Source: Macrostomum lignano (lineage: Eukaryota). From it: DNA of 64,000 nt. Numbering within the stretch: position 1 is the stretch's first letter; every line of letters starts with the position of its first letter. The DNA lies in the NCBI GenBank assembly GCA_002269645.1, contig NIVC01000412.1, forward strand, positions 310,001-374,000, written 5' to 3'. Both the position numbers and the translations under genes were made by a program. Under the pieces are notes generated by a model. It was not told the DNA's origin and made no database searches. It saw only the letters and a program-made list of their open reading frames with translations. Below are positions 8,138-55,400 of the stretch, piece after piece.

Positions 8138-8792
8138 ATTGCAGATTGAGATCTCTATACTGCCGATGATCCTGAGCACAATGTATTGAATTTATTGATA
8201 TTGTGTGGAGAGAGCATCTTGAAATTAAAAAGTCTTTATTTTAAGTCCAGCCAGCAAGCATCTTTAAAACGCAAACTTACGAACTTGAAGTAATTAAATA
8301 CCCTAAAGTCTTAATTAGGTTAAAACAACACCCTTTTATTTCAGTCTGGTTCTTAAACCAGACGTTTTAACTGAACTTTGCCCTCATGTAGTAGTAAAAC
8401 TTTTTATTACAACAAATTATCTCTTATCAATTTAATAATAACGGCCGATAATTATTAGAGCGCAAATATACAAGTGCGGACACAAATAAATGCCGTGTGT
8501 CCCTCGCATAACTTGGCAAAATCAAAAATCGTTTTTGAAGGTCATCAAACTTCAAATAAGTGTTTAAGAGATGCGTGTTAAAGTTTGAATAGTCTGCTGT
8601 TGAGGCCTCTCGAGAGGATTTACCATAGACATGTCTTGGCTTTGCACTTGCTGAAAATCAAGGGGCTCTTGGCCATAGACATCTCAGTGGGTGGCCTGCC
8701 GTGCTTTTGAACTTCATTTCAACACCATTAGGCTGACTGTAATGAGCTTTTGACTATGGCATGACTGGCTCAGCAGCATAACTTAATTTGAT

Positions 8793-10068
8793 CTAGGGAA
8801 TAAAATCCCGGGATCCCGGGATTAGGCCCAAATCCTTCCCGGGAAAATCCCGGGAATGGACCATCGGGATCCCGACCCCGCTTTGCAATAATTCAATCAT
8901 TCATTCTCGAATAGTAGTACATGTATCTCGTCAGGTGAAAATTCATAACCCAGTTGTCCTGCTTTGATTTATTAATCTTTTTACGCGTAGCATGCAGGCT
9001 AGTGAGAAGGCTAGGGCTGCAGGGATACAAAACTGAAGCTGTTGGCAGATCGTAGGAGATTTCAGGTGTAACAATGTACGTGCAACTGTATGCATATGGT
9101 ACTCGCAGACTAATGTAATTATTATTCAAAAACCTGTGCACAGAGCCTAAAGCAATAGAAGGCAATTCCTCATTGTTTCCGATCACAGCGCTATTAGCTT
9201 GCCAGACGGGAGTCAAATCACTTGTTCATTTGAACTCTCCCTCAATCTCAAACCCAGCTAAAATCAAGGGGTCTCAGCCTAGATCAGAAGCCCCCCTATG
9301 CGAAAGACCTCATTCTCAACACTGTCAGGATGCCCAGCATAGAGGTGGTGGCAGAACTACATGTACTTTAAGCAGTCCCTACCTTCAAACCTCATTGGCC
9401 GTAGTTGGGATCAGAACAGTGGAAACTTGCTATCGGACCACAACCCAAGCTACCAGTTCTCCATTTAGGGCGGGTGAGGTCTGATCCCCTTCTACCCTGG
9501 TGTCAGTACCTCTGGTCATAGATCCAAATCTAAGCTATCATTCCCTAGGTTACATCACAATCAAGTGTGATCTTCCTGAGCTGATACTGGCATGTAAAAA
9601 AGCACGTCTATTACGCCAGACCGTACATCACACTCCAATTCAGAGCTCACTGTCAGCTTCTTCAACTTTCTTGTTAGCAAAATCTTATTCTGTTCTAATT
9701 TATTATTGAAAGCCCTTTAAAACCAGTCTAGATGGCTTCGTAAACCAAAATTGCGCCAACAAAGATTAGAAACTTTTTTTTAATCCCGGGATCCCGGCCC
9801 AATTTGTCGAGATCCCGGGATTGGCAAAGTCCGGGATATCCCAATCCCGAGAATCCTCGGGGTTTTCGAAGTCCGGGATATCCCAATCCCGAGGAATTCC
9901 CGGGATTGAAAAAGTCCGGGATATCCCAATCCCGAGAATCCCCGGGGTTTTCGAAGTCCGGGATATCCCGATCCCGAGAATCCCCGGGGTTTTCGAAGTC
10001 CGGGATATCCCGATCCCGAGAATCCCGGGATTGGCAAAACCCGGGGGATTTTGTATTCCCTTCCCTAG
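8793..10068. mobile_element. Foldback/MITE-like element with CCCGGGA subterminal repeats
   Basis: The left end CTAGGGAATAAAATCCCGG and right end CCGGGGGATTTTGTATTCCCTTCCCTAG form imperfect TIRs. ATCCCGGGAT repeats cluster at 8800-8880 and 9780-10050. Confidence 0.7.
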
Positions 10069-11548
10069 TCCTCACTGCTTGTGACTATTGATCATGTCTA
10101 AATGAAAAGCTAGGGTGAAACTATAGAGCCGCTATGGCCAAATTGCTACCATAGACAAAAGCTGTTTAAGATTGATACCTGGACTTTAACATGCCAGGAG
10201 TATACGAGCGCACTAAGTCTCTTGAGAGTCTAGAATATTTCCAAGTTTTTAGTAAACGTCAAACTGAGCTAAGGTTGTTAAAACGCTATTTAACTATTTA
10301 ACAATAAAAAATTTCTGAATTAGATTAAACTTTCAGCATCAAAATAATCATGCCATTTGGGGCCAGTCCCCAAGGCACATATGGGAGTGCACGTGCCCGA
10401 CGATCAAGAAAGTATGAGTTGCGCTGGTTGTGCTTATTGTTGAAACGAAAAGAAAGGAAACTTCTCTAATAAACTAGCTTATAGTTAGTTATAGACACAT
10501 TACTAGCAATAAATATATGCATATGCACTTTAACACGCGCAAGCCCGAATTCGTGTATAATATTCATTTTAGTCGTTAAATAAATATATATATATAAATA
10601 AAATTTTCTGTACAAACAAGTCACTTTAACAGCGTCAAAGTGAATGCACAATGAACAAAAATCAGAGCAGGTTAATTAGACAGGGATGCGTTAAGTGTAT
10701 TAAATATATGAGAACAGCTGCGGTTATTAACAAGCGAGCTCTGGGGATGAACTACAGATAAAAGTGCAAATCAGGAGTATTCATTCATTCAAGCTGCTAC
10801 AGAGAGCTGATTAAATATTACCTGGGCACACCTTCAAGGCGGTGTAGCATTAAAAAAAGGGCAGGTAAAAAAAAGATCCTTTTAAAAAAACGCAGGATCC
10901 AAATTAGCTGCATTTTTTGTAGCAGGAAAAATATAAATTTAGATGGCAAAATTGCGCGCAGACTACTTAAAATTGTTTTTAAAAAACACACACAGCAGAT
11001 AAGTAGTATCTTGTGCGCATATCTGTGGCCCCGGTTTGTAAATTAATATCAACTGCGAATGAGACGTAAGCTGTTGATTGATTAGCATAGTTAAGGACAG
11101 GTGTTTAATTGGTGCAGTCACTGGGGTTGGCAAGGCTGGTCTCAGGGGACTCGGACAGTCAAAAACAGACGACAATAAACAACAATTAACAAGCAGCAGA
11201 AACTGTAATTTTGCACATGTAGACACAATTTCTTACACGGATTACTACATAGATATGCACACTAACATATACAAGACAAGGAACTACATGATTCCATTTC
11301 TGACAGGTAATTTATTGCACACAAAAGCTCAAACAGCCACGGCTAGATAAATAAAAGAGAGATTCCAAACTGCTTGATTGAGACAGAGAAATTAAATTAT
11401 TAAAAACATTGTAAGAGCTTTTAATTACACAATATCGATAGAAACTACATTTTTAAAAAATTCTGAAACTTAAAAACGGATAAAAAAATCGCGGCAAACA
11501 AAGAGTGAATTAGAATAGCGTTTCTGCCTTGGCTCTGTTCGTTAGTCT

Positions 11549-26739: not shown

Positions 26740-27043
26740 TGCTAAAGCGAACGTATAGATTTTATTTTCATAATTTTCAGCAGAACCTCAGCAACAAGTT
26801 TATCGAGTAAATGTATGTTTGTCACAATAAATCCGAGATCATTGTTGAGCATCATTTTCAAAACAATACTATCCATGTGCCAGTTGTGCAGTGCAACTTA
26901 ACAACAACAACAGCTGATTCTGCCAATTCCACTTACTCTTAAGAGTAATTTCAGATTACTTTAGATTAATTAAGAGTAATTTCAGATTACTCTAAAAAGA
27001 CGAGATGTTAAGGTATAAAAGTCGCCAAAAACAATTTGAGGCG

Positions 27044-28095
27044 TGTAGCGGACACATGTACTTTTGACAGAGCCAGCCACTGCTACTCAAACTGTCTATG
27101 GCCCAAATAAACTCGAGCCGTAAATGGCCCAGCCGCAGCACTTTATTAAAAGACAAGCGGTCTTCATCTCGCCGCACGCAAGCCGCTTCAGTGGTGAGCC
27201 CGACTATACTCAGCCGTAGCTGAGTATTTCAAGCTTTTCGCCCGCTGCCTCGTCACAGTTTCGGCCACCAGGTTTTCCGAGTCTAGCCAAAGCCATCGGC
27301 CACCTCGATCCCTGCATCCGGCTCAGCGCTTCTGACTGGAGCCGCATCAAAGTGACCATGACCGATTCCTGGTCACTGCGGTTATGCAGTAGGTGAGCAG
27401 TGCACTCCGGGTAAGGGGCTCTCGCCTGCCAAAGTTTGCTTGCAACGCCCCACCCGACGCTGCGACGTCGATGCGGCTCACCTCGGCAACGCCTTGTCCC
27501 AGCAGCACAGGCGGACACGTCGGACGAAGCATCGGTGCACTTTTCTGCGCTTCAGGCCCCACCACGCCACCGACGGATCACCACCACAATGGCATACGTA
27601 CCAGCAGCATCATCATCAGCACAACCATCCACTGCTGCCGCTGCCCTCGGCCTCGAGGATGCTGGTGCCCATGACCTCAACTGTCCCACAACGTTGCCAG
27701 CAAACTTTGGCAGGCGAGAGCCCCTTACCCGGAGTGCACTGCTCACCTACTGCATAACCGCAGTGACCAGGAATCGGTCATGGTCACTTTGATGCGGCTC
27801 CAGTCAGAAGCGCTGAGCCGGATGCAGGGATCGAGGTGGCCGATGGCTTTGGCTGGACTCGGAAGACCTGGTGGCCGAAACTGTGACGAGGCAGCGGGCG
27901 AAAAGCTTGAAATACTCAGCTACGGCTGAGTATAGTCGGGCTCACCACTGAAGCGGCTTGCGTGCGGCGAGATGAGGACCGCTTGTCTTTTAATAAAGTG
28001 CTGCGGCTGGGCCATTTACGGCTCAAGTTTATTTGGGCCATAGACAGTTTGAGCAGCAGTGGCTGGCTCTGTCAAAAGTACATGTGTCCGCTACA
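27044..28095. mobile_element. 1052-bp non-autonomous element with 404-bp TIRs, TGT...ACA ends and a GGCG target-site duplication (Ginger-like or inverted LTR end)
   Basis: Arms 27044-27447 and 27692-28095 are near-perfect reverse complements (only a few mismatches seen). GGCG occurs at 27040-27043 and 28096-28099. Spacer is 244 bp. Confidence 0.88.
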
Positions 28096-28293
28096 GGCGT
28101 TTTATTGTCTGCGACTTTGAATAGAATCGCATTTCGCATTTGCAACAAGTCTACAAGCGTAGACTCATCAGCGGCTCTGTAATTGATGACTGTTTCGCCA
28201 CACTCTTTTACGATTCTGCAACTTACTTGATGCACTCGCGTAGTCGCCCAGAGCGCTGAAGCAGCGTCAGCAGCAGCACTTCGTATAAATGTA

Positions 28294-49426: not shown

Positions 49427-52400
49427 TCAGTCAGGCAGGAGTAGCCAGCGCAGCGGGTTTGGGCACTGGCAGACGGCCCTCAGCTTGTCGCCGGCCATCC
49501 AATCAGCCAGACCGCTGAGCTTCAGTCTGGCCGCATACCCGGAGTTGTTCGGCTCATCAGAGATCCACAGAGTGGAGTTCACCTGAGTGCAGGCAGGGTG
49601 CGGTGCGGTGTACACATGTAACTTGCTCAACTATCAGCTTATTGAATCATAAACTCAATCACAAACTCATGAACTCGCAAACTCACTAATGGACTCACTA
49701 AGCTGATAAAATCATCTGTTAGGCGTGAGAACTCACCTCTCCGCCGCACGAGGCCCACACCCAGGCGGTTCCCGCGGCATTCTTCCTGGCAGCCACCCAG
49801 AGCTCCTCGGCGGCCACAATCGAGGTCGAATTGCTTTCCGGACTCAGAGCGCCGACCGAGCGCAGAGCGTCAGCCAGGGCTTCCTGAGGCCGCGGTCCGT
49901 CAATCTGGGCCAGCCTGCTGAGGCCAGCCGATCCCAGAGAGGCGCAGGCGGCCTGCTGCTCCTCAAAGCTGCCAGTCGCCTCGGTGCGCAGGTACACCAT
50001 GGCATTGTCAGAGTTGCCAGAGGCCGGCTGCACAAACCGGAAGCCGAGGCAAAGGTCCGGTCGAATGTAGGCGGTTACAATGGCAGCGTGTGCAGCGCAC
50101 CTGTCCGGAGTCATGGTCAGCCAAGGTGGCTGGCTGCATGCATTGAACTGCAGCAGGCGGCAGGAGAGCAGCTCGAGCTCAGCAATGAAGCCCTGCGTGG
50201 TGAGCACGATGGGCCAGTGATTGAAAAAAACGTTATAGAATGAAGCTGCAGTCTAATTGGAAACCGGCAAGGTCAAGCAAAGTTCCGACAAAATTTCGCA
50301 GTTGCTCTGTGTCTTTAGTGTACTTTTTAGATGAGGCTTATCGACTGCATTTGTCAAATTTCACTCTCTAAATTTACTTTGTAGAATCTGTGCTCAATGC
50401 TGCAGTTGACATCCATTGTGCAAACTCTGTTAGATTCATTTTTCCCGTAAATAAACCTAGGGTAGTCTTGATAATTTGAGCGAAATTCACTCCGATTGTG
50501 AAACTCAAACAATAAATCTATGCATGTAGCAGCTCTTTACACTGTAGAGAGTTTGTATGAGTTTGTAAACAAATTGTCTTAGCAACTGCGCAGACCCTGA
50601 ATATCATGAAACCAGACGGGGTTTTTCCCAGTGTGTTCAGTTTTTGTGAACGCTGCAAAATGGTGGATGGATCTTATATTGACATTAAAAGTATCGTAGT
50701 CGTCTGTTAAATTGTCAACCGTATTTGCATGGCTAATGCATTTTTTACTCGTCAGCCGATTTTAAGCCTGATTGTACCATGACTTTTGTGCCCGCTGGGC
50801 ACTTATTCTTGCCTTTTAATGCCATAGACTATATTTAAGCCCGCTTGCAGGACTTTAATGCTTTAAACTTACTTTAATGCAAATAAGCGGGCAGTTAATG
50901 ACATTTAACGCCCGATTGTCTATGTCAAACTTACTTTAATGCAAATTAGCGGGCAGTTAATGACATTTAACGCCCGATTGTCTATGTCAAACTTACTTTA
51001 ATGCAAATAAGCGGGCAGTTAATGACATTTAACGCCCGATTGTCTATGTCAAACTTACTTTAATGCAAATTAGCGGGCAGTTAATGACATTTAACGCCCG
51101 ATTGTCTATGTCAAACTTACTTTAATGCAAATTAGCGGGCAGTTAATGACATTTAACGCCCGATTGTTTATGTCAAACTTAATTTAATGCAAATTAGCGG
51201 GCAGTTAATGACATTTAACGCCCGATAATTCTGTCCCACTTTGTCAAGGACACAAATGTCCATGGCACAATAATAGTAATACCCATGCTTTGCGGGCGTA
51301 CTATTAAATAGGCGCCTTCATTGTGGTTACATAGATTCGTTGCCTGAAATGCTGTGGCTCATGGGGGGTTTCTGAGATGCCAAGGGTCAATATTATTGGT
51401 AGAATTGTGGGTAGGCCAAGCATCAAAGGGAGAGAGTATAGGGTTATGCCATGACTTGAAGCAGAGGCCGGCAAATGTTTTGCCTTAAGAGCAAGGTAAA
51501 GAACAAAGAGAATGACTGTGAGCCAGAGGGGGGAGAGAAGAGGAAATAGGAGAAAGGAGAGGCCAGAAGGGGGAGAAGAAAGGAGAGAAGATGAGAGAAG
51601 AGGAGAGACGAGAGAAAAGAGAGCAGAGAGAGGAGAAGAGACACAAACCTTGAGCGGGCCGAATTGTTATCGGGAAGTTTCAAAGGATCTGAGGGCCGGA
51701 TAGAAGAGCTTTTAACCCCCGGCTTAAAAGCTCTCAGGGGATGCTTTTTTCCTTAAATTTTTTTTCTAAGATACTAATAAGCAATAGCGACTGTCAAGGT
51801 AAAAAGCTGCATTAAGTTTATTAAAAAAACTACTCCTTTCGTTGTCGCCTCCCTAACGGGGGCGTAGATTGGTAGTCCACTTATACTAAAAATGATTTGC
51901 CTCTCAGGTATCTAGATAGTATAGTAGGTATGTTATTGATTTAAGACAAACGGTTTAATCGATTTTCATGAAAGTTGCACTGGTCGATTAGAAATTTATT
52001 TGTTAAAAGTTTAAAAAAAAATTTATAAGTTGCAACCTTGGAAAAAAACAAATGCGAATGTCCAATATTGGTAATTTTGTACTAAAATAACTATCCAATT
52101 GATGAATTTCGCAGCAAAAATTGGTCTTCAACGAAATGTACAAGAAATGTACTGCTCCCTTCTGAATGTACAATCCCAGTTTCGCTAAGAAAGACGCCAT
52201 CTACACGGGGATTCACTTGGAAAGGTCAAGTAATATCGAGCACGTAAAGAGTTCAAACAGACTCAGCTTCAGATTTTCCCCGAGGAACATGATCTTGTTT
52301 AATTTCTCTCATCAAAGCTTTCGCCATGGAAGTTAAACCATTTGGGCCTGCGCGCATTTAATTCAAGATACGTTTGCCAATGTAATGGAGCTTTTGGTAG

Positions 52401-55400
52401 CGATATGGTAGCTATGGTAGCAAGGCTGGCACAGCAGGCATTCAACTTGGTCCAACAAGCATCAATTTGGTCCATAGCTTCATTTGCAACTGCTGCGGAG
52501 TAAGATCAGCCCAGAATTTTGGACCATGTGCCAGGCTGTCAAACGAATGTCATTGGCTTGTGATCGAAGCACTCGACAGAAGTGAACACCCAAAGGGCAT
52601 TGCAAGGCTGCTGAATGTAAAAGAAAAGATGGTTTACAGCATCCATCAGTGCGTTGAAACTCTCCTGGCAGAGATCGCCTGCGAAGGGGTGGCAATCGCC
52701 AAGGCAAGTTGCTCGAGAGCCTCAGGTCCAACTGCTACTCGATGCAGTTGAGACGAACCCTTTGTTGACGGTGTAGAAATGCAGCAGAAGTTGAAGGAAC
52801 AGTTCTAGTTGGCTATCAAATTTCGACTATCGGCAGCCAGAGCTCTGGAAAAGCGACTGACGGGTAGAGACGCTGACATTCCAGCGGTACGCAACAACCT
52901 GCATGCAGACGGTTGCGAGGGGCATGAATTTGCCGAATGGCTCACGAGCGTTTGGACCAAATTGATGCTTGTTGGACCAAATTACATGTAAATTCTGCTA
53001 TGCCAAGCCTTGCTGCCATAGACAAAAGCTCCGTTGCATTGACGTACGTATCTTGGATTAAATTCAATGTAGGATTCATACATCGATGTATGAATCCTAC
53101 ATTGTATCACGCTGGCTTAATACTTTAGATGGCGCGTTAGATGCACGCTCAGTTAATTTGTCTTAACCATAGACAAAAATGCGTGAAAGGCACGCAAGTT
53201 GATTGAGTGTTGCGAAGAAGGGAATAAGAAGCTGTTAAATTAAAATCACTTGTGAGAGAATATGGCTGAGCCACCAACTAAAGTCAGACTTCTGAATCTG
53301 AGCAAATTTCCAAACGAAATGATTTCCGGCTTGTCCACCAATGAGATTGACGACATTCTGAACGAGCCTGATAATCTACCGGAGTCGGCAATTGATCGAG
53401 AAGAGGAGGATCTTCTGGAGGCAATTTTCAAGAAGATACCTGACGAAGAAGCTGAACTACTTGAATTGGAACAGCTCGTTTCCGAAATCGAGGACACTGC
53501 TGCTAGTAAAAGTGTGACAAAGGCTACCGAATATTATGTCGGTAAGTTGCAGAGCTTCATGGAGAACCATCCGTCAGTTCAGCGTGATTTGGCGACTTCT
53601 ACACCGCGCGAGATCGACAGTCTATTGCGATACTTCTATGGCTCACTTCGCAAGAGGAATGGCGAATACTTTGCTCCAGCCACGTTGATTTGTATCCGAG
53701 CTGCGCTCTACCGGCATTTCATGTTGACAAGGCGAATCAATATTCTAACTGACGACGCATTCTATGCTTCCAATACGACACTGAAGTCAATGGGCAGAAT
53801 CTTCATTGCCCGAGGCGGACGCGCCCGACACTTCCAATCGATCGAGCCTGTTGATCTGAAGAGGCTGTCTGACTACTTCAATCGGAAATCTCCAGAGGTG
53901 CTACTCACTTTCCGTGCATTACACGCACGCGTTAGACGCACGCTTGTTGCCTTTACTCAGATAGAAAATTGCCATAGACACCTACATTAGACGCACAGTA
54001 AATCGTGCATCTAACGCGCGCCAGCGTGATACAATGCACGTAGGCCCAAATGGGCTGCAGAAAGCTATATTTTTCCAAGAATTATAACAATTAATTGCAG
54101 GCACATTTTCACAGAGTATCATATGCAGTCCGTAGTTTTCTCGTATAAAAAGCCAATAAAATATTGCTTTTAGAAAAAGCCTAAGAATAAATAATTCATA
54201 CGGGTATGTAGAAACCAATGGCTAAAACTTTTGGAATTCCGCACCTTGGAGAAGCAGAAATTTCATGGAAAATCTCACCCTTATAACCCGAGACTTCAAA
54301 TGTACGCTTATAAGACGTGTTGGTTCTCGACAGTTCTTAACTTCTTAGCATAATCTTCAAGTCCGCTAAACAGTAGGAGCGTTAAATAAATAAAAAATTA
54401 AGGCGATGCGAATTTTAGGTGTTGCGAAGTTTATGCGTTACTATAGCAACCTGTGCACCTCGTTGAGGGGGCAAAAAGGAAATAAAAGATATTTTGGAAT
54501 AAAGTACTTCGTAAATGTCAGGTTTTTTTACCTTGTGGTCTCTTTTTAATTAGTATCTTAAAGGAGAATGATGTATGTAGCCTAATATATCAGCTGAAAT
54601 GTCTTATCAGATATCAGATAAGACATCTCAGCAATTCTCCCCAAGTTCCACAGCAGCGATTCCCCCATGAGTCTTTTATGGTTGACACAGCGCAATTCTT
54701 TTATAGGGCTTTAAGATCCGACAGAATGGGCCGCATAGAAGACGCCAAGCCCTGCATGGAGCGGCAAAGTGAGGCGAGGCCATCAGATTAAGGTATTAAA
54801 GTGGCACAAAAAGCAGATAGAGCAAATAGATAGAACAATAGAGGCCTACAATGGAATGCAACAGCTCGTGACAGAACTGTAGCAGCCGCCATCCATTCCA
54901 TACGGAAGACAAAGGCGAGGCGGCAGACTGAAACGAGGCAGTAGATAGGCAAAGCCAGCCGGAGAAGACTAATGAGCGCTGCGGGAGCCCGACAATTGCC
55001 CGCAATCAAACCCTATCAAAACGTTTCGATGGTAACTGCATATCAAATGCATATTCTTATTGTAGCTTTTCCTTTCTATATACAGCCATGGGTACATCTG
55101 TGAGCTATTAATTCATGTTCATACATGTCATGCCGTTTTGTTCCCTAAATCTCTTCATTAAGACTTAATAAGCATAAGAAGGCAACGCTGACAAAATCTT
55201 GGCGGGAAAAAGTCGGCGGGAAAATCTCCTGCGGGCAATTCTCATGGACTCCCATTACCAATAGTCTAACCAAGCCAGAAAGAAGATTTTAACACCGGAG
55301 ACGAAAATGGTCTTACGTCTTTTATGATTGACAGGGCGCTTCTACTACGGTTGACATGGCGTTAAGGTGCCATGAAGTCTAGTAGGTTTAATGAAAGTGG

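What the first reader, a model, noticed from the sequence alone, without database searches (positions are those of the whole stretch)
52338..54053. Palindromic scaffold with two cassettes at mirror-equivalent sites, one encoding a Crypton recombinase fragment
Seen: deleting cassette X (52356-53063) and cassette Y (~53100-54036) leaves an ~80-bp near-perfect palindrome, CCATTTGGGCCTRCGYGCA(A)TG-TAGGATTCATACATCGATGTATGAATCCTA-CATTGCACGTAGGCCCAAATGG, whose central 40 bp (53065-53104) is perfect. Both cassettes sit at the same CAATG/CATTG position, one in each arm. Each has its own unrelated TIRs, both carry CCATAGACAAAA, and I see no TSD. X holds a Tc1-like HTH remnant; Y holds a tyrosine recombinase fragment. 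Knowledge: tyrosine recombinases act on palindromic sites, and most Cryptons lack long TIRs and TSDs. Inference: site-specific, attachment-site-like integration of different cassettes into a palindromic target, or a hairpin-rich composite transposon. I know of no described equivalent.
Basis: partly seen in the sequence, partly recalled or inferred. Interest (0 to 1): 0.82.

Follow-up and report, generated by a model that had tools for sequence, protein, structure and literature searches.

The report
Crypton-like element nested in Tc1-like transposon
The supposed palindromic scaffold with two cassettes is really two nested transposons of the flatworm Macrostomum lignano: a young, recombinase-type (Crypton-like) defective element that carries its own terminal palindrome, inserted into the inverted repeat of an old Tc1/mariner-like element.

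Summary
Related loci from Macrostomum lignano (GCA_002269645.1) show three things.

- **The outer arms are X's own repeat tips.** In L001, an X-like copy carries them contiguously at both ends, with no palindrome and no Y. X is a decayed Tc1/mariner-type non-autonomous element, not a cassette.
- **The central palindrome belongs to Y.** It travels with Y to two other loci. One is the homologous spot in the repeat of a different Tc1-like element (L002). The other is unique DNA whose paralogue keeps the empty site (L003/L004).
- **Y is a discrete ~0.97-kb insertion** at 53070-54036, flanked by a 5-bp direct repeat (NAATG). Its ends are not inverted repeats. It encodes only the N-terminal half of a Crypton-type tyrosine recombinase.

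Full-length relatives (35-41% amino-acid identity) from other organisms share the layout: core, 110-135-nt palindrome, inverted core, inverted copy of the right end, ORF, right end, core. The library papers I read report no terminal repeats in animal Cryptons, so this layout is the interesting residue.

The nested-transposon verdict is firm. Movement of Y by a tyrosine recombinase is inferred.

The parts
52338..52500 (+). Left terminal inverted repeat of X, an old Tc1/mariner-like non-autonomous element. It has a 5-nt deletion (TTGAA, TGAAT or GAATT) relative to the other three repeat ends. The outermost ~14-23 nt (about 52315-52337) are degenerate.
   Evidence: Window 52338-53069 aligns to L001 9964-10660 at 81.7% over 747 nt, and the four repeat ends align.
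52530..52900 (+). Decayed remnant of a paired-like (PAI/RED) HTH DNA-binding domain of a Tc1/mariner-type transposase. It is interrupted by stops and has no DDE domain.
   Evidence: The frame +1 translation hits M. lignano P0002 at 59% identity, E 3.6e-44. P0002 against the X2 ORF gives 31% identity over 125 aa, E 1e-10. The X2 ORF matches HTH_32 (3.2e-8) and HTH_29 (9.3e-7), both above their Pfam cut-offs, and also HTH_SB and PAX below their cut-offs. P0002 itself matches HTH_29 only weakly (E 0.006).
52930..53069 (-). Inner part of X's right terminal inverted repeat. It ends in AAATTCAATG, the point where Y is inserted.
   Evidence: The uninterrupted homologous repeats in L001 read AAATTCAGTGCGCGTGAGCCC and AAATTCAATGCGCGAAAGCCC.
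53065..53069 (+). Left copy of the 5-bp direct repeat CAATG flanking Y. It is a crossover core or a target-site duplication.
   Evidence: The flanking pentamers in the three copies are CAATG/CAATG (window), GAATG/CAATG (L002) and AAATG/AAATG (L003). The empty site in L004 has a single AAATG.
53070..53099 (.). Y's left-terminal palindrome, 2 x 15 nt. With the flanking CAATG and CATTG it forms the perfect 40-bp palindrome. It is a centre-deleted version of the longer palindrome in L002 (38-nt arms, 92%, 21-nt centre).
   Evidence: Full-length relatives carry equivalent 110-135-nt palindromes.
53100..53147 (+). Inverted core CATTG, then an inverted copy of Y's right end: TATCACGCTGGC, a 15-nt insert, then GCGCGTTAGATGCACG.
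   Evidence: pairs I8 and I9. Conserved in L002 and L003.
53262..53990 (+). A 242-aa ORF. Nucleotides 53262-53906 encode the N-terminal (core-binding, QRICH1-like) half of a Crypton-type tyrosine recombinase. The catalytic half is missing after ...SPEVLL, and the last 27 codons read into non-coding end sequence.
   Evidence: Pfam QRICH1 E 5.7e-5, below the cut-off. There are 541 homologues; residues ~10-215 align to the N-terminus of 400-525-aa proteins. Of the five such proteins scanned (403-487 aa), four match QRICH1, all five match DUF3504 and four match Phage_integrase at E<=0.01. Alignment A3. The same truncation is present in L002 and L003.
53915..54019 (+). Right subterminal repeats of GCGTTAGAYGCACG: two direct copies, one inverted copy and one degenerate copy. 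They form an imperfect stem (21-nt arms, 86%).
   Evidence: D2, D4, I5; 4 matches against 0.29 expected.
54020..54036 (+). Y's right end GCCAGCGTGATA (54020-54031) followed by the right copy of the direct repeat CAATG (54032-54036).
   Evidence: The three-copy alignment is conserved exactly up to GTGATA+(C/A)AATG and then diverges.
54037..54069 (-). The outer 31 nt of X's right repeat (CACGTAGGCCCAAATGGGCTGCAGAAAGCTA, 54037-54067) plus the flanking TA (54068-54069).
   Evidence: L001 and X2 both end ...CTGCAAAATGCTA|TA.
53016..53024 (+). CCATAGACA motif in X's right repeat, 46 nt upstream of the Y insertion point. Further copies lie in Y at 53167-53175 and 53972-53980.

Best explanation
Window 52338-54067 is a nested pair of transposons in a Macrostomum lignano-type genome.

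**X.** X is an old, decayed, non-autonomous Tc1/mariner-like element with ~140-165-nt terminal inverted repeats, a TA flank and a remnant of the paired-like DNA-binding domain. It spans about 52315/52338-53069 plus 54037-54067.

**Y.** Y is a young ~0.97-kb defective element (53070-54036) inserted 31 bp from X's right end. It is bounded by a 5-bp direct repeat (CAATG; NAATG across the three copies). Its layout is: core, terminal palindrome, inverted core (CATTG), inverted copy of its own right end, 5' half of a Crypton-type tyrosine recombinase gene, subterminal repeats, right end, core.

**Shown.** The nesting, the boundaries, independent insertions at three loci, one preserved empty site, and conservation of the palindrome layout in full-length relatives.

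**Inferred.** Y is an internal-deletion derivative of an autonomous Crypton. A full-length recombinase supplied in trans moves it through a circular form whose junction (right end, NAATG, palindrome) recombines with an NAATG in the target.
For: X's boundaries:
- The L001 X-like copy (81.7% identity) has CCCATTTGGGC..CGCGCATTGAATTT contiguous with the repeat at both ends. It has TA flanks and no palindrome or Y.

Y as a mobile unit:
- Y plus palindrome is found 96.8% identical in L002, inside the right repeat of a different Tc1-like element (X2). It sits at the homologous position, 31 nt from the end, in the same orientation.
- It is found 98.2% identical in L003, in unrelated DNA.
- L004 carries the empty paralogous site, GTGCATAAAATG|GTAGTTAAT.
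- The three-copy alignment stops exactly at GTGATA+NAATG.
- Y's extreme ends (TAGGATTC... and ...GCGTGATA) are not inverted repeats.

Crypton origin:
- Residues ~10-215 of the ORF align to the N-terminus of 400-525-aa proteins. All five scanned (403-487 aa) match DUF3504, and four each also match QRICH1 and Phage_integrase.
- UniRef protein P0001 (98% identical) continues past Y's breakpoint with HEVYYNF. This aligns to the start of the catalytic domain in relatives, so a longer copy exists.

Fit to the recombinase model:
- In L002 the left pentamer is the target's GAATG and the right one is CAATG. A crossover inside AATG predicts exactly this.
- Full-length relatives share the layout, often in head-to-tail tandem. 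Their palindromes fold at -40 to -50 kcal/mol, z -11.5 to -14.6.
- Literature: Cryptons are bounded by 4-6-bp direct repeats regarded as recombination substrates, and non-autonomous Cryptons exist (PMC3212892; PMC13465315).
Against: - Only three Y copies could be examined.
- No full-length parent with Y-type ends was recovered, and no circular junction was observed.
- All Y copies lack the catalytic domain, so recombinase-mediated movement is inferred from ancestry and end structure.
- The flanking AAATG/AAATG in L003 fits a plain 5-bp target-site duplication at least as well as a crossover core. Under the crossover model the donor circle must already have carried AAATG.
- The L003 copy has lost the hairpin (z 0.01), so the palindrome is either dispensable after insertion or simply unstable.
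- X's left terminus is degenerate, so its TA flank is seen only on the right.
Confidence: 0.8

Rival explanations
1. An ~80-bp palindromic attachment-like scaffold received two different cassettes (X and Y) at mirror-equivalent CAATG/CATTG positions.
For: The inverted repeats and the palindrome exist at the stated coordinates. Y does favour NAATG.
Against: - The outer arms are contiguous parts of X's repeat in L001, and the repeat extends beyond them.
- The palindrome moves with Y to L002 and L003.
- The left 'junction' is a 5-nt deletion, not an insertion point.
- No scaffold copy was found in the window, in the M. lignano loci L001-L004 (pattern searched), or in two public collections.
Confidence: 0.03
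2. Y is a cut-and-paste (DDE-type) non-autonomous transposon. It makes a 4-5-bp AATG-specific target-site duplication and merely carries a captured fragment of a Crypton gene.
For: - The flanking pentamers are identical in the window and in L003, and the empty site has one copy.
- Internal inverted repeats of 17 + 16 nt and subterminal repeats resemble transposase-binding sites.
- There is a precedent for a Crypton recombinase inside a mariner-type element: MarCry-1_FO (PMC3212892).
Against: - The extreme termini are not inverted repeats.
- The left inverted repeat lies inside the palindrome, yet the palindrome always moves with the element.
- L002 has GAATG on the left and CAATG on the right, which needs a later mutation under this model.
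- The same end layout occurs in full-length elements whose only ORF is the tyrosine recombinase.
Confidence: 0.12
3. Y moves as single-stranded DNA through a hairpin-recognising HUH-type enzyme (IS200/IS605-like, Helitron-like or Replitron-like). It inserts 3' of AATG without duplication, and the recombinase fragment is captured cargo.
For: - A terminal hairpin at the left end and an imperfect stem near the right end.
- Insertion always 3' of AATG.
- If the right AATG is counted as part of the element, no duplication is needed in the window or in L002.
Against: - No Rep/HUH gene is associated with Y or its relatives.
- Relatives with the same ends encode only a tyrosine recombinase.
- The L003 right pentamer follows the target (AAATG).
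Confidence: 0.04
4. The arrangement is an assembly artefact, a chimeric join or a palindrome produced by sequencing.
For: The window is very rich in repeats and minisatellites. Perfect palindromes can be artefacts.
Against: Y with the same left-end palindrome region and the same boundaries recurs in two independent contigs of another assembly; the hairpin is intact in L002 but degraded in L003. Distant relatives have the same layout.
Confidence: 0.01

Closest known systems
Non-autonomous animal Cryptons (CryptonI-1N1_RPro, CryptonA-1N1/1N2_OL; Kojima & Jurka 2011, PMC3212892)
   Same: An internal-deletion derivative keeps the 5' and 3' parts of an element whose only gene is a DUF3504-type tyrosine recombinase. 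Cryptons in general carry short (4-6 bp) terminal direct repeats. There are no inverted repeats at the extreme termini.
   Different: That paper reports no terminal repeats, direct or inverted, in animal Cryptons. Y and its relatives have a 5-bp direct repeat, a long left-terminal palindrome and an inverted copy of the right end just inside it.
MarCry-1_FO (a Crypton recombinase inside a mariner-type transposon, Fusarium; PMC3212892)
   Same: Crypton-derived sequence is physically combined with a Tc1/mariner-type element bounded by inverted repeats and TA.
   Different: MarCry is one composite that moves by its DDE transposase. Here Y is a separate, independently mobile insertion inside the repeat of a dead Tc1-like element. 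It is found elsewhere without X.
DIRS1-type retrotransposons (inverted terminal repeats plus internal complementary region)
   Same: The element uses a tyrosine recombinase. It has inverted repeats and an internal segment (palindrome arm, CATTG, inverted right end) that is the reverse complement of the predicted circle junction (right end, CAATG, palindrome arm).
   Different: No reverse transcriptase or RNase H is seen. The full-length relatives sampled are 1.8-2.1 kb with the tyrosine recombinase as the only ORF called within the unit. The complementary segment lies at the left end. Y is flanked by a 5-bp direct repeat.
Tc1/mariner elements with long inverted repeats containing direct repeats (IR-DR type, e.g. 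Sleeping Beauty) - for X and X2
   Same: TA flanks and long terminal inverted repeats. X2 has repeated internal binding-site-like motifs (GGGCATTCAAATTAGACAAG). The DNA-binding domain is paired-like.
   Different: No DDE/D catalytic domain is present in any copy seen, so these are non-autonomous deletion derivatives. The family is unnamed here.
IS200/IS605 and Helitron-type hairpin-end elements
   Same: Subterminal hairpins, asymmetric ends and insertion next to a fixed short motif.
   Different: No HUH or Rep gene is present. The pentamer is duplicated or shared at both junctions. The associated enzyme is a tyrosine recombinase of the integrase type.

Membership tests
Crypton (tyrosine-recombinase DNA transposon), as a non-autonomous derivative | Encodes, or derives from an element encoding, a tyrosine recombinase with the R-H-R-Y catalytic domain | tested here: inconclusive
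   Y encodes only the N-terminal half; all catalytic motifs are absent in the three copies. Homologues of 400-525 aa extend well beyond it; all five scanned match DUF3504 and four match Phage_integrase. P0001 (98% identical) runs 7 aa into the catalytic domain. No full-length parent with Y-type ends was recovered.
Crypton (tyrosine-recombinase DNA transposon), as a non-autonomous derivative | Short (4-6 bp) direct repeats at both termini that match the target | tested here: met
   The flanks are CAATG/CAATG, GAATG/CAATG and AAATG/AAATG. The empty site has a single AAATG, and uninterrupted X-family repeats have one pentamer at that position (CAATG or CAGTG in L001, GAATG in X2).
Crypton (tyrosine-recombinase DNA transposon), as a non-autonomous derivative | No inverted repeats at the extreme termini and no long terminal direct repeats | tested here: met
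   The termini TAGGATTC... and ...GCGTGATA are not complementary. The element does, however, carry an internal inverted copy of its right end and a terminal palindrome. This departs from published descriptions.
Crypton (tyrosine-recombinase DNA transposon), as a non-autonomous derivative | No reverse transcriptase, which distinguishes it from DIRS, Ngaro and PAT | tested here: inconclusive
   Y is internally deleted. Full-length relatives sit on 1.6-2.3-kb contigs or repeat units, and the recombinase is the only ORF called within the unit. Y's own parent was not seen.
Crypton (tyrosine-recombinase DNA transposon), as a non-autonomous derivative | Excision and integration through a circular double-stranded intermediate | not testable with these tools
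   This needs read-level or PCR evidence for the junction right end, NAATG, palindrome. Head-to-tail tandems with that junction exist in relatives (L006, L014, L015), but they do not prove a circle.
Tc1/mariner superfamily (for X), as a non-autonomous derivative | TA target-site duplication and terminal inverted repeats | tested here: met
   L001 and X2 have TA|TAGC...GCTA|TA at both ends. The window's right end reads GCTA|TA at 54067-54069; its left end is degenerate. The repeats are ~140 nt at 74-78% identity.
Tc1/mariner superfamily (for X), as a non-autonomous derivative | DD(E/D) transposase with an N-terminal paired-like HTH domain | tested here: inconclusive
   Only the HTH part is present. 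X2 matches HTH_32 and HTH_29 above their cut-offs, and HTH_SB and PAX more weakly. X is homologous to X2 at E 1e-10. No catalytic domain was found in any copy, and a protein search with the X2 ORF found nothing.
   No further copy was found in the window, in the M. lignano loci L001-L004 or in two public collections. Its parts segregate: the arms go with X (L001) and the centre goes with Y (L002, L003).

The most novel reading that the evidence does not exclude
The 40-bp palindrome is the centre-deleted remnant of a conserved cis-element of a whole lineage of animal DUF3504-type Cryptons.

Integrated copies read: NAATG-like core, 110-135-nt palindrome with a GC-rich apex, inverted core, inverted copy of the right end, recombinase gene, right end, core. 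The circular form would therefore carry one long palindromic 'double attachment' site with two mirrored crossover cores.

Animal Cryptons have been reported to lack any terminal repeats. If this reading holds, it would be the first sequence-defined recombination site for them. It would also explain the head-to-tail tandems and possibly the preference for Tc1-like repeats that carry a CCATAGAC motif about 46 nt from an AATG.
Probability: 0.4. Interest if true: 0.65.

Novelty: new variant of a known kind. Interest (0 to 1): 0.45.

Why it matters
As first described, a new kind of palindromic integration scaffold, the finding dissolves into ordinary nested transposons.

What remains is useful to people who study mobile DNA. 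Crypton boundaries are notoriously hard to define. [quoted passage not shown]

This work provides:
- A young non-autonomous Crypton-like family with exact boundaries and a preserved empty site.
- A 5-bp NAATG junction repeat.
- A terminal palindrome plus inverted right-end copy that recurs in full-length relatives from other organisms.

Together these give concrete candidate recombination sites that can be tested directly. They also warn annotators that several M. lignano gene models (P0002, P0004, P0005) read through these transposons.

Tried and rejected
**Early readings, dropped**
- I first read X and Y as two separate TA- or TTAA-targeting insertions into a small palindromic MITE. L001 showed the arms are X's own repeat, so I dropped this.
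- I considered Y a circularly permuted inverted-repeat transposon crossed over at CAATG. All three copies and the distant relatives share the same 'permuted' order, so this is simply the native layout.
- I asked whether the long L002 hairpin derives from an X-type repeat (CCATTTGAGCGCGCA against CCATTTGGGCCTGCGCGCA). Local alignment against shuffles is not significant, p about 0.05-0.08.

**Searches that led nowhere**
- The central palindrome has no match in metagenome contigs or genome contigs.
- Looking up contigs by exact protein failed for the window ORF, P0001 and P0005.
- A protein search with the X2 ORF found nothing.
- An nhmmer search with an X repeat profile found no further copy in the window. 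The region 8700-10200 shares only a ~35-nt motif block with X.
- Pfam on the window's own X ORFs gave no HTH hit. Support for the HTH remnant comes only through P0002 and X2.

**Left unresolved**
- Whether CCATAGAC is a binding motif of the recombinase.
- Whether the 5-nt deletion in X's left repeat is a footprint or a coincidence.

Full report
**1. The observation**

- Outer inverted repeat at 52338-52358 / 54033-54053 (21 nt, 90%).
- X (52356-53063) with inverted ends. BLAST and MAFFT extend these to about 120 nt at 74%.
- A palindrome whose central 40 bp (53065-53104) is perfect. As single-stranded DNA it folds at -17.9 kcal/mol, z -8.6.
- Y with two perfect inverted blocks, 17 nt at 53100-53116 / 54020-54036 and 16 nt at 53132-53147 / 54004-54019. 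A 15-nt insert separates the two blocks on the left side only.
- CCATAGACAAAA in both X and Y.
- A 242-aa ORF at 53262-53990.

Nothing else in the 64-kb window resembles the outer arms, the palindrome or Y.

**2. The source organism**

The Y ORF is 98% identical to a UniRef protein of the flatworm Macrostomum lignano (P0001). The translated remnant inside X hits an M. lignano 'hypothetical protein' (P0002, 59% identity). Through these proteins and their cluster mates I fetched four contig segments of assembly GCA_002269645.1 (L001-L004). The window comes from M. lignano or a very close relative.

**3. X is a whole transposon, and the 'outer arms' are its repeat tips**

L001 holds an X-like copy, 81.7% identical over 747 nt. 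In it, CCCATTTGGGC..CGCGCATTGAATTTRATCCAAGATA runs uninterrupted at both ends, with no palindrome and no Y.

Aligning the four ends (window left, window right with the insert removed, L001 left, L001 right) shows three things.
- The repeat continues outward to TAGC(W)TTYTGCAGCCC and is flanked by TA. The window's right end is therefore 54067, with TA at 54068-54069.
- The window's left repeat differs from the other three by a 5-nt deletion in GCA[TTGAA]TTTAAT.
- The outermost ~14 nt of the window's left repeat are degenerate.

A better preserved relative, X2 in L002 (1774-3651), has the same terminal 13-15 nt and TA flanks. It has repeated GGGCATTCAAATTAGACAAG motifs inside its inverted repeats. 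It also has a 176-aa ORF that matches HTH_32 and HTH_29 above their Pfam cut-offs, plus HTH_SB and PAX below their cut-offs. Weak PDB matches are to Pax5/8 and the Sleeping Beauty PAI subdomain. P0002, a gene model that merely reads through an X copy from repeat to repeat, is homologous to that ORF (31% identity over 125 aa, E 1e-10).

X is thus a decayed, non-autonomous Tc1/mariner-type element.

**4. The palindrome belongs to Y, and Y is mobile**

*Second copy (L002).* L002 carries a copy 96.8% identical to window 53082-54095. It lies in the right repeat of X2, between GTCTAATTTGAATG and CCCGCAGTTCAAAC. That is 31 nt from the element's end, the same distance and orientation as in the window (AAATTCAATG | CACGTAGG...). 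X and X2 are too diverged to align outside short blocks, while the Y copies are 97-99% identical. These are therefore independent insertions at homologous sites.

*Third copy (L003) and its empty site.* L003 carries a copy 98.2% identical to the window. It lies in unrelated DNA...GTGCATAAAATG | TAGGATTC...GCCAGCGTGATA AAATG | GTAATTAATG. The paralogous locus L004 keeps the empty site...GTGCATAAAATG GTAGTTAAT..., with a single AAATG.

*Boundaries.* In all three copies the block TAGGATTCATACATCGAT...CATTG precedes the body. The alignment of the right ends stops exactly at GTGATA + (C/A)AATG.

*The hairpin.*
- The L002 hairpin is long: 38-nt arms at 92%, a 21-nt centre, -46 kcal/mol, z -11.2.
- The window copy lacks the central 74 nt.
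- The L003 copy has lost most of the right arm (z 0.01).

*The mobile unit in the window* is therefore 53070-54036 (967 bp), flanked by CAATG at 53065-53069 and 54032-54036. The flanking pentamers are CAATG/CAATG (window), GAATG/CAATG (L002) and AAATG/AAATG (L003).

**5. What Y encodes**

An exhaustive HMMER search found 541 homologues. Residues ~10-215 of the ORF align to the N-terminal ~215 residues of proteins of 400-525 aa. Five of these (403-487 aa) were scanned against Pfam at E<=0.01: all five match DUF3504, four match QRICH1 and four match Phage_integrase. The alignment shows the RGRE, HCxR, GHK and RY catalytic motifs downstream of the point where Y stops.

All three Y copies break at the same place (...SPEVLL) and share the same stop. 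The L003 copy also has a CGA-to-TGA nonsense change and a frameshift, so the ORF is not under selection. P0001 continues EVLL-HEVYYNF. This matches LLHELFYSIVYYFGTRGRE in relatives, so a longer version about 98% identical exists in the species.

Y is best read as an internal-deletion derivative of a Crypton-type element.

**6. Mechanism**

*Shown:*
- A discrete insertion with an empty site.
- A 5-bp junction repeat with an invariant AATG.
- Extreme termini that are not inverted repeats.

*Known from the literature:*
- Cryptons carry 4-6-bp terminal direct repeats regarded as substrates for recombination between a circular form and the target.
- Non-autonomous Cryptons exist (PMC3212892; PMC13465315).

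*Inferred:* a full-length recombinase excises Y as a circle whose junction reads right end, NAATG, palindrome. It then re-inserts Y by crossover at an NAATG in the target.

*How the flanks bear on this.* L002 fits the crossover model without extra assumptions: the left pentamer is the target's GAATG and the right one is CAATG. A plain duplication needs one later mutation there. L003's AAATG/AAATG fits a duplication, or a donor circle that already carried AAATG. I put the recombinase route at roughly 0.55-0.6, a DDE-type route with an AATG-specific duplication at about 0.12, and a hairpin-dependent HUH route at about 0.04. The nested-transposon anatomy itself I put at about 0.9 or higher.

**7. 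The layout is conserved in full-length relatives**

| Locus | Source and protein | Layout seen |
|---|---|---|
| L006 | ENA scaffold, 471-aa recombinase | Two head-to-tail copies (300-nt repeat, 99%, spacing 1837). Junction: AACATAGCTAAACTAATTA-CAATG-[38-nt arm]-GTCA-[38-nt arm]-CATTG-TAATTAGTTCTGCTATGTT |
| L007-L013 | One 450-aa protein in seven marine-metagenome contigs | 55-nt-arm palindrome at the left boundary. It is followed at once by ATATTATTCAGGATTTT, whose partner AAAATCCTGAATAATAT lies at the right boundary. Four different left flanks and five different right flanks diverge exactly there. |
| L014 | ENA contig, two tandem elements | Each element is preceded by a palindrome. One junction reads ...GATATA-CAATG-...-CATTG-TATATC... 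|
| L015 | Logan contig, 525 aa | TAATG-palindrome-CATTA, and terminal direct repeats 2130 nt apart |
| L005 | Logan contig, 487 aa, 41% identity | CATTACCGCACGC / GCGTGCGGTAATG on either side of the ORF |

The palindromes in L006, L009, L014 (both) and L015 fold at -40 to -50 kcal/mol, with z -11.5 to -14.6. Their GC-rich apexes resemble the one in L002: GTGCGC-T-GCGCAC in L002 against GTGCGC-GTCA-GCGCAC in L006.

Most full-length relatives sit on contigs of 1.6-2.3 kb. This is what compact single-gene repeats would give.

The segment 'palindrome arm, CATTG, inverted right end' is the reverse complement of the predicted circle junction. This is formally reminiscent of the internal complementary region of DIRS1. 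Kojima and Jurka state that they found no terminal repeats in animal Cryptons. I could not check Repbase entries, so the layout appears undescribed rather than proven new.

**8.

Three things read together give the apparent 80-bp palindrome: X's left repeat tip, Y's palindrome with its flanking CAATG/CATTG, and X's right repeat tip. The 'same CAATG/CATTG position in each arm' combines one real junction on the right with one 5-nt deletion on the left. X's left repeat carries at least two other indels (visible in the repeat alignments), so one of them falling near the mirror position is not remarkable.

**9. Verdict**

- The structure is a nested insertion: a non-autonomous Crypton-like element in the repeat of a Tc1/mariner-like element.
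- The Crypton end architecture is the part worth following up.
- Interest is 0.45. Novelty is a new variant of a known kind.
- Limits: three Y copies, no autonomous parent, no direct evidence of circles, and the relatives come from short, partly chimeric metagenomic contigs.

Noticed in passing
window 8623, 8673, 8746(-), 10149, 27094(-), 28038, 50822, 53016, 53167, 53972; L005 53/115; L015 152/220/2129: The octamer CCATAGAC is about 5-fold enriched in the window (9 against 1.8 expected) and in the M. lignano loci. It sits subterminally in unrelated repeat families: X-family repeats, Y, and a foldback. It also occurs in the closest full-length Crypton relatives (L005: 2 against 0.06 expected; L015: 3 against 0.07). 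In X and X2 it (CCATAGAC in X, the one-off variant CCATAGAT in X2) lies 46-47 nt upstream of the Y insertion point. It could be a recombinase recognition motif or a host promoter motif.
   Followed up: partly
window 27031-28108: A large foldback: 417-nt arms, 97% complementary, 244-nt spacer. It contains GGCCATAGACAGTTTGAG in each arm. It was not characterised further.
   Followed up: no
window 8700-10200: A region bounded by inverted copies of a ~35-nt block shared with X's subterminal repeat (GCTACCATAGACAAAAGCT). It encloses a nested element with CCGGGATCCCGGGATTA inverted repeats (8808-8824 / 9781-9797) and a 42-bp tandem array (9827-10026).
   Followed up: partly
window, whole length: The window is dominated by dozens of different minisatellite arrays (71 Tandem Repeats Finder rows, periods 4-202). 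Most of the long 'ORFs' are artefacts of these arrays.
   Followed up: no
L002 4480-4790: About 1 kb downstream of X2::Y lies a second, different fragment that by eye resembles a Crypton N-terminal domain (...ATTKNQINRFKKFLREKNLPDD...YAPDTIRGFRASIHRF). UniRef gene model P0004 (738 aa) splices host exons, the Y ORF and this fragment together.
   Followed up: partly
L001 10001-10612; UniRef P0004 and P0005: Public M. lignano gene models are chimeric with these transposons. P0002 is a read-through of an X copy from repeat to repeat. P0005 is a protein kinase with Y ORF residues 8-92 as its C-terminus. P0004 is described in the item above.
   Followed up: partly
window 52356-52360: X's left repeat has lost 5 nt (TTGAA, TGAAT or GAATT). 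The deletion overlaps the mirror image of the pentamer where Y is inserted in the right repeat. This may be coincidence or the footprint of an earlier event.
   Followed up: partly
L006 448-855 (-): In the metagenomic relative, the first (5'-truncated) Crypton copy abuts a reverse-strand ORF with a Tnp_P_element (P-element/THAP9-like transposase) Pfam hit.
   Followed up: no
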